Program-made: the position numbers and the translations under genes | Part shown: positions 11,075 to 11,082 of the stretch, one piece after another | Layout: the number at the start of each line of letters is the position of its first letter | Position numbering within the stretch: position 1 is the stretch's first letter | Assembly (NCBI RefSeq): GCF_030028105.1 | Contig: NW_027275854.1 | Location: 1-49,102, forward strand | Source: Mobula birostris | Taxonomy: Eukaryota | Direction of reading: 5' to 3' | DNA length: 49,102 nt | Notes under the pieces: generated by a model | Database searches by the model: none | What the model was told of the DNA's origin: nothing | The model's input: the letters and a program-made list of their open reading frames with translations, nothing else

Positions 11075-11082
11075 TTAATGCT
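11075..11082 (-). promoter_or_regulatory. miR-155 8mer target site AGCATTAA in 3' UTR
   Basis: Plus strand ttaatgct is AGCATTAA in the mRNA, complementary to miR-155-5p seed UAAUGCU plus the A1 anchor. Mammalian Aicda has a functional miR-155 site. Confidence 0.75.

What the first reader, a model, noticed from the sequence alone, without database searches (positions are those of the whole stretch)
11075..11082. Perfect miR-155 8mer in the AID 3' UTR suggests very old post-transcriptional control
Seen: AGCATTAA in mRNA sense, about 40 nt upstream of AATAAA, in the only AU-rich part of an otherwise GC-rich, repeat-invaded UTR. Known: miR-155 represses mouse Aicda through an AGCATTAA site, limiting off-target mutation and translocations. 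The chance of a given 8mer in 700 nt is roughly 1% under uniform base composition. Inference: the miR-155/AID circuit may predate the split of cartilaginous and bony vertebrates.
Basis: partly seen in the sequence, partly recalled or inferred. Interest (0 to 1): 0.72.

Follow-up and report, generated by a model that had tools for sequence, protein, structure and literature searches.

The report
Ancient miR-155 site in manta AID
The manta ray gene for AID, the enzyme that mutates antibody genes, carries just before its mRNA tail signal the same eight-letter docking site for microRNA-155 that restrains AID in mice, and the site recurs in AID genes from eel to platypus, so this brake is probably as old as jawed vertebrates.

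Summary
AGCATTAA lies on the minus strand at 11075-11082 and is the only copy in the window. It sits 633 nt after the AID stop codon and 37 nt before the first and only canonical AATAAA. The window is a whole 49,102-bp contig of Mobula birostris.

I took AID 3' UTRs (stop to first AATAAA/ATTAAA) from manta, eel, gar, sturgeon, turtle, platypus, frog and skate. Of all 65,536 8-mers, AGCATTAA is the most widely shared, in 5 of 8 species. A miR-155 seed match of 7mer grade or better occurs in 7 of 8, always in mRNA sense. Eel and platypus were fetched as held-out tests, and both carry the perfect 8mer. In the fishes examined except the skate, whose match overlaps the hexamer, the site lies 31-150 nt before the poly(A) signal.

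Several caveats remain:
- The skate 8mers lie in LINE-derived DNA, so they are ambiguous.
- Shark and stingray DNA could not be fetched.
- I have no manta transcript, no manta mir-155 locus and no functional test.
- The scan's earlier notes do not mention miR-155.

Verdict: a real, selectively maintained miR-155 site. It is a new member of a known kind and extends a known mammalian circuit to cartilaginous fish.

The parts
11075..11082 (-). Canonical miR-155 8mer target site, AGCAUUAA in mRNA sense, at +633 to +640 of the 3' UTR
   Evidence: Only copy in the window. Coordinates re-checked. The same 8mer or a 7mer variant occurs in 6 of 7 other AID 3' UTRs. Predicted unpaired probability is 0.24 against a UTR median of 0.047.
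11032..11037 (-). First and only canonical poly(A) signal (AATAAA) after the AID stop codon, 37 nt downstream of the site
   Evidence: A GU-rich stretch (TGTGT) follows about 45 nt further on.
11038..11714 (-). AID 3' UTR from the first base after the stop to the poly(A) hexamer (677 nt, 62% G+C)
   Evidence: There is no canonical poly(A) signal inside it.
11715..11768 (-). Last coding exon of AICDA ([17 protein letters not shown] plus TGA), the C-terminal nuclear-export peptide of AID
   Evidence: Translation. Identical to the C-terminus of P0140 (Mobula birostris) and P0142 (Hypanus sabinus). Similar to the shark AID C-termini.
10942..11150 (-). Unique AU-rich island between two tandem arrays; it holds the miR-155 site and the poly(A) signal
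   Evidence: No other copy in the window and no nucleotide similarity to the other species' loci. A+U profile.
11151..11463 (.). GC-rich tandem array (71-nt and 57-nt periods, about 3.5 and 2.2 copies) inside the 3' UTR
   Evidence: Tandem Repeats Finder and self-BLAST.
10276..10941 (.). 68-nt minisatellite of 9.5 copies, starting about 90 nt after the poly(A) hexamer and probably outside the mRNA
24923..25038 (-). AICDA exon 4 ([39 protein letters not shown]), flanked by AG and GT; a 13.2-kb intron separates it from the last exon
27964..28382 (-). AICDA deaminase exon (fused mammalian exons 2 and 3; HAE...PCxxC zinc motif)
   Evidence: 91% identical to Hypanus sabinus AID.

Best explanation
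The 8mer is a genuine, selectively maintained binding site for miR-155 in the 3' UTR of the manta ray (Mobula birostris) AICDA mRNA. Argonaute loaded with miR-155 would pair its nucleotides 2-8 with AGCAUUA, with the final A opposite nucleotide 1. It would then recruit the deadenylation and decay machinery to an mRNA whose poly(A) tail begins only about 55-60 nt away, and so lower the AID dose in activated B cells. The same mechanism is shown in mouse and human. The site belongs to a lineage of miR-155 sites kept in AID 3' UTRs across jawed vertebrates, probably inherited with local turnover from their common ancestor, where it lay just upstream of the poly(A) signal. Shown here: the sequence, its position relative to the stop and the poly(A) signal, orthology of the gene, and cross-species enrichment and strand specificity of the motif. 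Inferred: use of this poly(A) site, expression of miR-155 in manta B cells, and repression.
For: (1) The gene is AID. Pfam APOBEC/AID domains match at E about 1e-32. The exon is 91% identical to Hypanus sabinus AID.
(2) The perfect 8mer is the only copy in 49 kb. It is at +633 of a 677-nt UTR with no earlier canonical poly(A) signal. Its chance probability is 0.002-0.006.
(3) The context favours function under the usual target-site rules (my knowledge of published targeting rules, not checked here): 8mer grade, the AU-rich end of the UTR, and predicted accessibility 0.24 against a median of 0.047.
(4) Comparative signal. Sense-strand sites lie between the stop and the first poly(A) signal in eel (8mer, +131), gar (7mer-A1, +436), sturgeon (7mer-m8 at +424 and +474), turtle (8mer, +1778), platypus (8mer, +961) and skate (8mer, +420).
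(5) Unbiased control. AGCATTAA is the top-ranked of all 65,536 8-mers for the number of UTRs containing it (5 of 8). As a seed it scores 7 of 8, a level reached by only 3 of 16,384 seeds; the other two are a one-letter variant read from the same site and the low-complexity CCTCTCT.
(6) Half of the 8mers found (5 of 10) in 392,720 nt of all fetched DNA, both strands, fall in about 8 kb of UTR. There are eight sense sites and no antisense sites in the UTRs, against a sense-strand background elsewhere of 0.10 per kb.
(7) The variation between species is what seed pairing predicts. Only GCATTA (nucleotides 2-7) is common to all sites, and either the m8 or the A1 position is lost in sturgeon and gar.
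(8) The miR-155 family is scored present in lamprey, zebrafish, salmon and amniotes in a curated matrix (PMC6007596, supplementary file 2, character 77).
(9) miR-155 sites in mouse and human AID 3' UTRs are reported as functional (PMC2556787; PMC4677338; PMC3163633).
Against: I have no transcript, 3' end or small-RNA data for manta. No mir-155 locus could be looked for, because only this contig is available, and Rfam finds nothing in the window. The UTRs cannot be aligned outside the motif, so common descent of the individual sites cannot be proven; repeated gain under similar selection would look the same. The frog Eleutherodactylus coqui has no 7mer-grade site before its first poly(A) signal, though an assembly gap lies there. 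Both skate 8mers lie in reverse-transcriptase-derived DNA, which shows that this 8mer can also arrive by accident. The manta is the only informative cartilaginous fish. The platypus site is 881 nt from the poly(A) signal, so the position is not universal.
Confidence: 0.72

Rival explanations
1. Chance match. The 8mer arose by drift in an AU-rich stretch and has no function in manta; the sites in other species are unrelated coincidences.
For: The motif is AU-rich and sits in the AU-rich end of the UTR. The skate carries two 8mers inside transposon-derived DNA within 2.3 kb of its stop codon, so accidental copies do occur. Per-species chance of a 7mer-grade match is appreciable in the long or AT-rich UTRs: sturgeon 0.16, turtle 0.14.
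Against: Composition-aware chance in manta is 0.002-0.006. Chance of the 8mer is 0.0015 in eel and 0.012 in platypus, and both were held-out tests. AGCATTAA ranks first among all 8-mers for sharing across UTRs. All sites are in mRNA sense.
Confidence: 0.08
2. The motif is conserved, but for another reader than miR-155, such as an RNA-binding protein, a polyadenylation auxiliary element, or a DNA-level element (TAAT-core homeodomain or POU site) downstream of the gene.
For: In five of six fishes and reptiles the motif lies within 150 nt upstream of the poly(A) hexamer, as an auxiliary 3'-end processing element might. No test here identifies the trans-acting factor.
Against: The conserved core and its pattern of decay follow miRNA seed rules: GCATTA is kept while the m8 or A1 position is lost. 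The sense-only orientation argues against a DNA element. The platypus site is 881 nt from the poly(A) signal, and the human site lies in the first ~1 kb of a much longer UTR (PMC3163633), which argues against a role in 3'-end processing. The same sequence is the experimentally mutated miR-155 site in mouse, as reported in PMC2556787 and PMC4677338.
Confidence: 0.08
3. The site is a relic, or is not exposed in manta. The sequence descends from a real ancestral site, but in this lineage the mRNA ends upstream, or miR-155 is lost, changed or not co-expressed, so no repression occurs.
For: There are no transcript or small-RNA data. The weak signal variants AAGAAA (+127) and TTTAAA (+210) lie upstream. 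The UTR has been invaded by a 313-bp tandem array. No paper on miR-155 in elasmobranchs was found.
Against: A perfect 8mer is unlikely to survive without selection in a UTR whose surroundings have been replaced by repeats, and the island that holds it is unique. The only canonical signal lies 37 nt downstream. The miR-155 family is present in lamprey and in bony vertebrates, so loss would be a special event.
Confidence: 0.12

Closest known systems
miR-155 target site in the mouse and human Aicda/AICDA 3' UTR (Teng et al. 2008; Dorsett et al. 2008; Borchert et al. 2011, PMC3163633)
   Same: The platypus ortholog fetched here has the identical 8mer at +961. The presumed outcome is also the same: a capped AID dose.
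   Different: The host is a cartilaginous fish. The site lies 37 nt from the poly(A) signal of a 677-nt UTR rather than in the first ~1 kb of a roughly 2-kb UTR (PMC3163633). Flanking sequence cannot be aligned. No functional data exist. The two primary 2008 papers are not held in the library, so I know them only through citing papers.
[quoted passage not shown] 2008, PMC2556787)
   Same: It is a second microRNA brake on the same mRNA for which deep conservation has been claimed.
   Different: In my eight UTRs the miR-181 seed match TGAATGT occurs only in gar (+334), plus a 7mer-A1 in frog, and is absent from manta. The miR-155 site is therefore far more widely kept than the miR-181b site.
miR-150 site in the MYB 3' UTR, functional in zebrafish, chicken and mammals (PMC2940766)
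   Same: It is an immune-lineage microRNA-target pair whose site is kept over hundreds of millions of years in otherwise diverged UTRs.
   Different: The gene and the microRNA differ. That pair has reporter evidence in several species, whereas this one has it only in mammals.

Membership tests
Canonical miR-155 target site in AICDA mRNA | Perfect match to miR-155 nucleotides 2-8 plus an A opposite nucleotide 1 (8mer AGCAUUAA) | tested here: met
   Exact match at 11075-11082 on the minus strand. The seed UUAAUGCU is taken from established knowledge of miR-155.
Canonical miR-155 target site in AICDA mRNA | The host gene is the AICDA ortholog | tested here: met
   Pfam APOBEC/AID domains. Best hits are vertebrate AID, 91% to Hypanus sabinus. 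The protein equals the public Mobula birostris AID model.
Canonical miR-155 target site in AICDA mRNA | The site lies inside the 3' UTR of the mature mRNA: after the stop codon and before the cleavage site, in mRNA sense | tested here: inconclusive
   By sequence it is met: +633 after TGA, no canonical poly(A) signal upstream, and AATAAA 37 nt downstream. No transcript or 3'-end data could be consulted.
Canonical miR-155 target site in AICDA mRNA | The site is kept in orthologous UTRs more than chance allows | tested here: met
   Seven of 8 species have a 7mer-grade or better site. AGCATTAA is the top 8-mer of 65,536, and only 3 of 16,384 seeds match its score. The held-out eel and platypus are both positive. 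All sites are in sense orientation.
Canonical miR-155 target site in AICDA mRNA | miR-155 exists with an unchanged seed and is expressed with AID in the species | not testable with these tools
   Only this 49-kb contig of the genome is available, and Rfam finds no microRNA in it. The scan's notes do not mention it. Indirect support: family 155 is scored present in lamprey and bony vertebrates (PMC6007596 supplement).
Canonical miR-155 target site in AICDA mRNA | Seed-dependent repression of the mRNA or of a reporter | not testable with these tools
   This needs an experiment. It is reported for mouse and human only.

The most novel reading that the evidence does not exclude
The miR-155-AICDA pairing is an ancestral circuit of jawed vertebrates, at least about 450 million years old. 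A microRNA brake on the antibody mutator would then have been installed at or near the origin of AID-driven immunoglobulin diversification, originally as a site placed immediately upstream of the poly(A) signal of a short UTR. It would have been held by selection, with local turnover, in rays, ray-finned fishes, reptiles and mammals while everything around it was replaced. That would make it one of the oldest known microRNA-target pairs in adaptive immunity.
Probability: 0.6. Interest if true: 0.62.

Novelty: new member of a known kind. Interest (0 to 1): 0.52.

Why it matters
AID is a programmed mutator, and its dose decides between useful antibody diversification and translocations or lymphoma. 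In mice the miR-155 site is one of the few microRNA sites whose single-site mutation gives a phenotype. Finding the site in a manta ray, an eel, a gar, a sturgeon, a turtle and a platypus, as the most widely shared 8-mer of these UTRs, suggests that dose control by miR-155 is not a mammalian refinement. It would instead be part of the original design of AID-based immunity. The finding also gives a concrete element that can be mutated to test how cartilaginous fish, which hypermutate heavily and lack classical germinal centres, limit collateral damage. I found no paper in the searchable library reporting this conservation beyond mammals. The two primary 2008 papers could not be read, so earlier mention of non-mammalian conservation cannot be excluded.

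Tried and rejected
(1) My own slip. 

(2) I tried to fetch AID loci of the closest relatives and sharks: Hypanus sabinus, Scyliorhinus torazame, Heterodontus francisci and Chiloscyllium plagiosum. The genes are on record, but no DNA is served because the assembly files are too large.

(3) Nucleotide alignment of the manta UTR or the AU-rich island against the other loci found nothing beyond short chance matches. Homology of individual sites therefore rests on the motif and its position only.

(4) An Rfam scan of the window found no RNA family.

(5) The bacterial promoter and terminator scan is irrelevant to a vertebrate gene, and I ignored it.

(6) I looked in window 1-11000 for the NECAP-like gene (DUF1681) that follows AID in gar and eel, hoping to bound the UTR. 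Only weak repeat hits appeared.

(7) Literature. Teng 2008 and Dorsett 2008 are not held. The elephant shark genome paper has no supplement held. No paper links miR-155 with elasmobranchs, or the AID site with fishes.

(8) I considered counting the skate 8mer at +420 as support from a related species and rejected it. It lies in a sense-strand reverse-transcriptase-like open reading frame, and the second 8mer lies antisense to another one.

(9) I did not count the 6mer in the frog, in GC-rich context next to an assembly gap, as a site.

Full report
**What is there**

The window is a complete 49,102-bp contig of the giant manta ray. A cluster member named 'single-stranded DNA cytosine deaminase [Mobula birostris]' (P0140, 193 aa) is recorded on a contig of exactly that length.

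The AID gene runs on the minus strand:
- The deaminase exon is at 28382-27964. It carries the HAE...PCxxC zinc motif and matches Pfam APOBEC/AID domains at E about 1e-32.
- Exon 4 is at 25038-24923, flanked by AG and GT.
- The last coding exon is at 11768-11715 and reads [17 protein letters not shown] followed by TGA, behind an AG acceptor.
- That peptide is identical to the C-terminus of P0140 and of Hypanus sabinus isoform X3. It resembles shark AID C-termini.
- The best protein match of the deaminase exon is Hypanus sabinus AID at 91%.

**The observation**

AGCATTAA occurs once in the window, on the minus strand at 11075-11082. That is +633 of the 3' UTR, which starts at 11714. My scripts counted manta offsets from 11713, so some call outputs read +632 and +677.

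The first and only canonical poly(A) hexamer after the stop is AATAAA at 11037-11032 (+678), 37 nt past the site. Upstream of the site there are only the weak variants AAGAAA (+127) and TTTAAA (+210).

The UTR is 62% G+C. Its last 100 nt are 58-78% A+U. A 71/57-nt GC-rich tandem array (11151-11463) sits inside the UTR, and a 68-nt minisatellite (10276-10941) starts about 90 nt after the hexamer. The 209-nt island between the two arrays, which holds the site and the signal, is unique in the window.

The chance of this 8mer in this UTR is 1.0% under uniform composition, 0.3-0.6% with local composition, and 0.18% under a first-order Markov model.

**Comparative test**

No tool here holds vertebrate genomes as such. 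However, the look-up of encoding contigs returned DNA for AID loci from assemblies that were not too large:
- spotted gar (L001), Atlantic sturgeon (L002), the pond turtle Emys (L003) and the frog Eleutherodactylus coqui (L004);
- little skate (L005);
- after I had fixed the criterion, American eel (L006) and platypus (L007).

In each locus the tool's gene end coincides with a stop codon after an AID-type C-terminal peptide. I defined each UTR in the same way, from the stop to the first AATAAA or ATTAAA.

| Species | miR-155 match | Position after stop | nt from site end to first poly(A) hexamer |
|---|---|---|---|
| Manta | 8mer | +633 | 37 |
| Eel | 8mer | +131 | 31 |
| Gar | 7mer-A1 (GGCATTAA) | +436 | 42 |
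| Sturgeon | two 7mer-m8 (AGCATTAC, AGCATTAT) | +424, +474 | 150, 100 |
| Turtle | 8mer | +1778 | 84 |
| Platypus | 8mer | +961 | 881 |
| Skate | 8mer | +420 | overlaps the hexamer |
| Frog | none of 7mer grade | - | - |

The frog has only a 6mer beside an assembly gap, which I left alone.

**Controls**

- *All possible 8-mers.* I counted how many of the eight UTRs contain each one. AGCATTAA is first, in 5 of 8. It ties only with the overlapping AAGCATTA. Every other 8-mer reaching 4 either overlaps the same site or is CT-rich low complexity.
- *All possible seeds.* I scored each of the 16,384 7-nt seeds as a microRNA site (7mer-m8 or 7mer-A1). Only three reach the miR-155 score of 7 of 8. The other two are TGCATTA, which is read from the same sites through the A1 rule, and CCTCTCT.
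- *Held-out species.* For the eel and platypus pair, 0.47% of seeds hit both. The 8mer chance is 0.0015 in eel and 0.012 in platypus.
- *Background rate.* Ten 8mers occur in 392,720 nt of all fetched DNA counted on both strands, and five of them are in the roughly 8 kb of UTR.
- *Strand.* The UTRs hold eight sense sites and no antisense sites. Sense-strand sequence elsewhere in the loci has 0.10 seed-type matches per kb.
- *Pattern of variation.* Only GCATTA, the complement of miR-155 nucleotides 2-7, is common to all sites. The m8 position is lost in gar and the A1 position in sturgeon. Seed pairing predicts exactly this.

**Limits of the comparative evidence**

The skate does not count as clean support. 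Its 8mer at +420 lies in a sense-strand open reading frame with the NDYRPVAL-type reverse-transcriptase signature (RVT_1, E 5.6e-4, below Pfam's threshold). Its second 8mer at +2255 is antisense to a clearer RVT_1 fragment (E 2.8e-11). The skate protein is also unexpectedly divergent, at 63% identity to manta AID.

The nearest relative (Hypanus) and all sharks could not be examined, because no DNA was served. The UTRs share no alignable sequence beyond the motif. Inheritance with turnover therefore cannot be told apart from repeated gain. Either way the regulation is maintained by selection.

**The microRNA**

I could not look for mir-155 in the manta genome. Rfam finds nothing in this contig, and the scan's notes hold no microRNA finding for this genome.

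In the curated matrix of Tarver et al. 2018 (PMC6007596, supplementary file 2), character 77 is family 155. I counted its state by hand as 1 in Petromyzon, Danio, Salmon and the amniotes shown, and 0 in Ciona and Branchiostoma. A review citing Faraoni 2009 also lists lamprey, and in addition sea squirt (PMC4677338). A family present in lamprey and in bony vertebrates is expected in cartilaginous fish. From memory, MirGeneDB lists Mir-155 for Callorhinchus and a catshark; I could not verify this here.

**How it most likely works**

Argonaute loaded with miR-155 would bind the 8mer, which sits in an accessible, AU-rich stretch. The predicted probability that the 8 nt are unpaired is 0.24, against a UTR median of 0.047. 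The site lies about 55-60 nt from the expected cleavage site.

Binding would promote deadenylation, decay and translational repression of AID mRNA, as reported for mouse and human (PMC2556787, PMC4677338 and PMC3163633). The sequence-level steps are shown here. Expression of the microRNA, use of the poly(A) site and repression are inferred.

**Comparison with what is known**

The miR-155 site of mammalian AID is textbook knowledge. The manta site meets the sequence-level criteria for membership: seed match, host gene, UTR position by sequence, and conservation. Co-expression and repression are untested.

It differs from the human site in lying next to the poly(A) signal of a short UTR. The human site lies in the first ~1 kb of a roughly 2-kb UTR. 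All the fishes examined and the turtle share the position close to the poly(A) signal, which may be the ancestral arrangement.

By contrast, the miR-181b site that has been called conserved down to zebrafish is found only in gar and weakly in frog among my eight UTRs. Seed matches for miR-93/17, miR-361 and miR-26 are found in none.

**Verdict**

The site is a new member of a known kind, not a new mechanism. Its value lies in extending a functionally important microRNA-target pair to cartilaginous fish, and in the finding that the miR-155 8mer is the single most widely shared 8-mer in AID 3' UTRs. I found no paper in the searchable library reporting this. The two primary 2008 papers are not held, so prior mention of non-mammalian conservation cannot be excluded.

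Noticed in passing
L001-L003 and L006 against the window (3' UTR ends): In manta, eel, gar, sturgeon and turtle the miR-155 site lies 31-150 nt upstream of the first canonical poly(A) hexamer. UTR lengths range from 169 to 1,869 nt. In platypus the site is 881 nt away. A position close to the poly(A) signal may be the ancestral arrangement.
   Followed up: partly
L005:10001-13647 and flank (little skate, Leucoraja erinacea): The skate AID is only 63% identical to manta AID, less than manta is to catshark (76%). The gene is compact, 3.6 kb against more than 16 kb in manta. LINE reverse-transcriptase fragments start about 130 nt after its stop codon. Amblyraja radiata has a protein in the same 90% cluster, named 'deaminase-like'. 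The skate gene may be a fast-evolving ortholog or a paralog.
   Followed up: partly
L002:17117-17174 (sturgeon, +424 and +474 after the stop): Two 7mer-m8 miR-155 sites lie 50 nt apart in a very AT-rich UTR. This may reflect site duplication or turnover.
   Followed up: no
L001:15283-15290 (gar, +334); window 11038-11714: Gar has a miR-181 7mer-m8 match (TGAATGT) about 100 nt upstream of its miR-155 site. Manta, eel, sturgeon, turtle, platypus and skate have none between the stop and the first poly(A) signal. The published 'conserved' miR-181b site of AID is therefore much less general than the miR-155 site.
   Followed up: partly
Proteins P0001 and P0141 (Hypanus sabinus isoforms X2 and X1): The annotated stingray isoforms read through the exon 4 donor (…RRILQVSSPLTLPR…) and so lack the C-terminal export peptide. 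The manta sequence after exon 4 reads similarly (…[19 protein letters not shown]). An intron-retaining AID isoform without the export signal may be shared by rays.
   Followed up: no
window 10276-10941 and 11151-11463: Two unrelated tandem arrays, a 68-nt unit x 9.5 and a 71/57-nt unit x about 5, bracket the unique 209-nt island that holds the microRNA site and the poly(A) signal. The functional 3' end seems to have been spared while the sequence on both sides was replaced by repeats.
   Followed up: partly
L001:17067-22392 and L006:9197-13555: In gar and eel a NECAP-like gene (DUF1681) follows AID on the same strand, only 549 nt after the stop in eel. No such exons were found in window 1-11000, so the manta contig seems to end before the next gene.
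   Followed up: partly
window 27964-28382, frame +1 of the minus strand: The out-of-frame translation of the deaminase exon has no stop in 139 codons. It matched three database 'proteins' at E 2e-8 to 3e-4, presumably mis-framed gene predictions in GC-rich AID-like exons.
   Followed up: no
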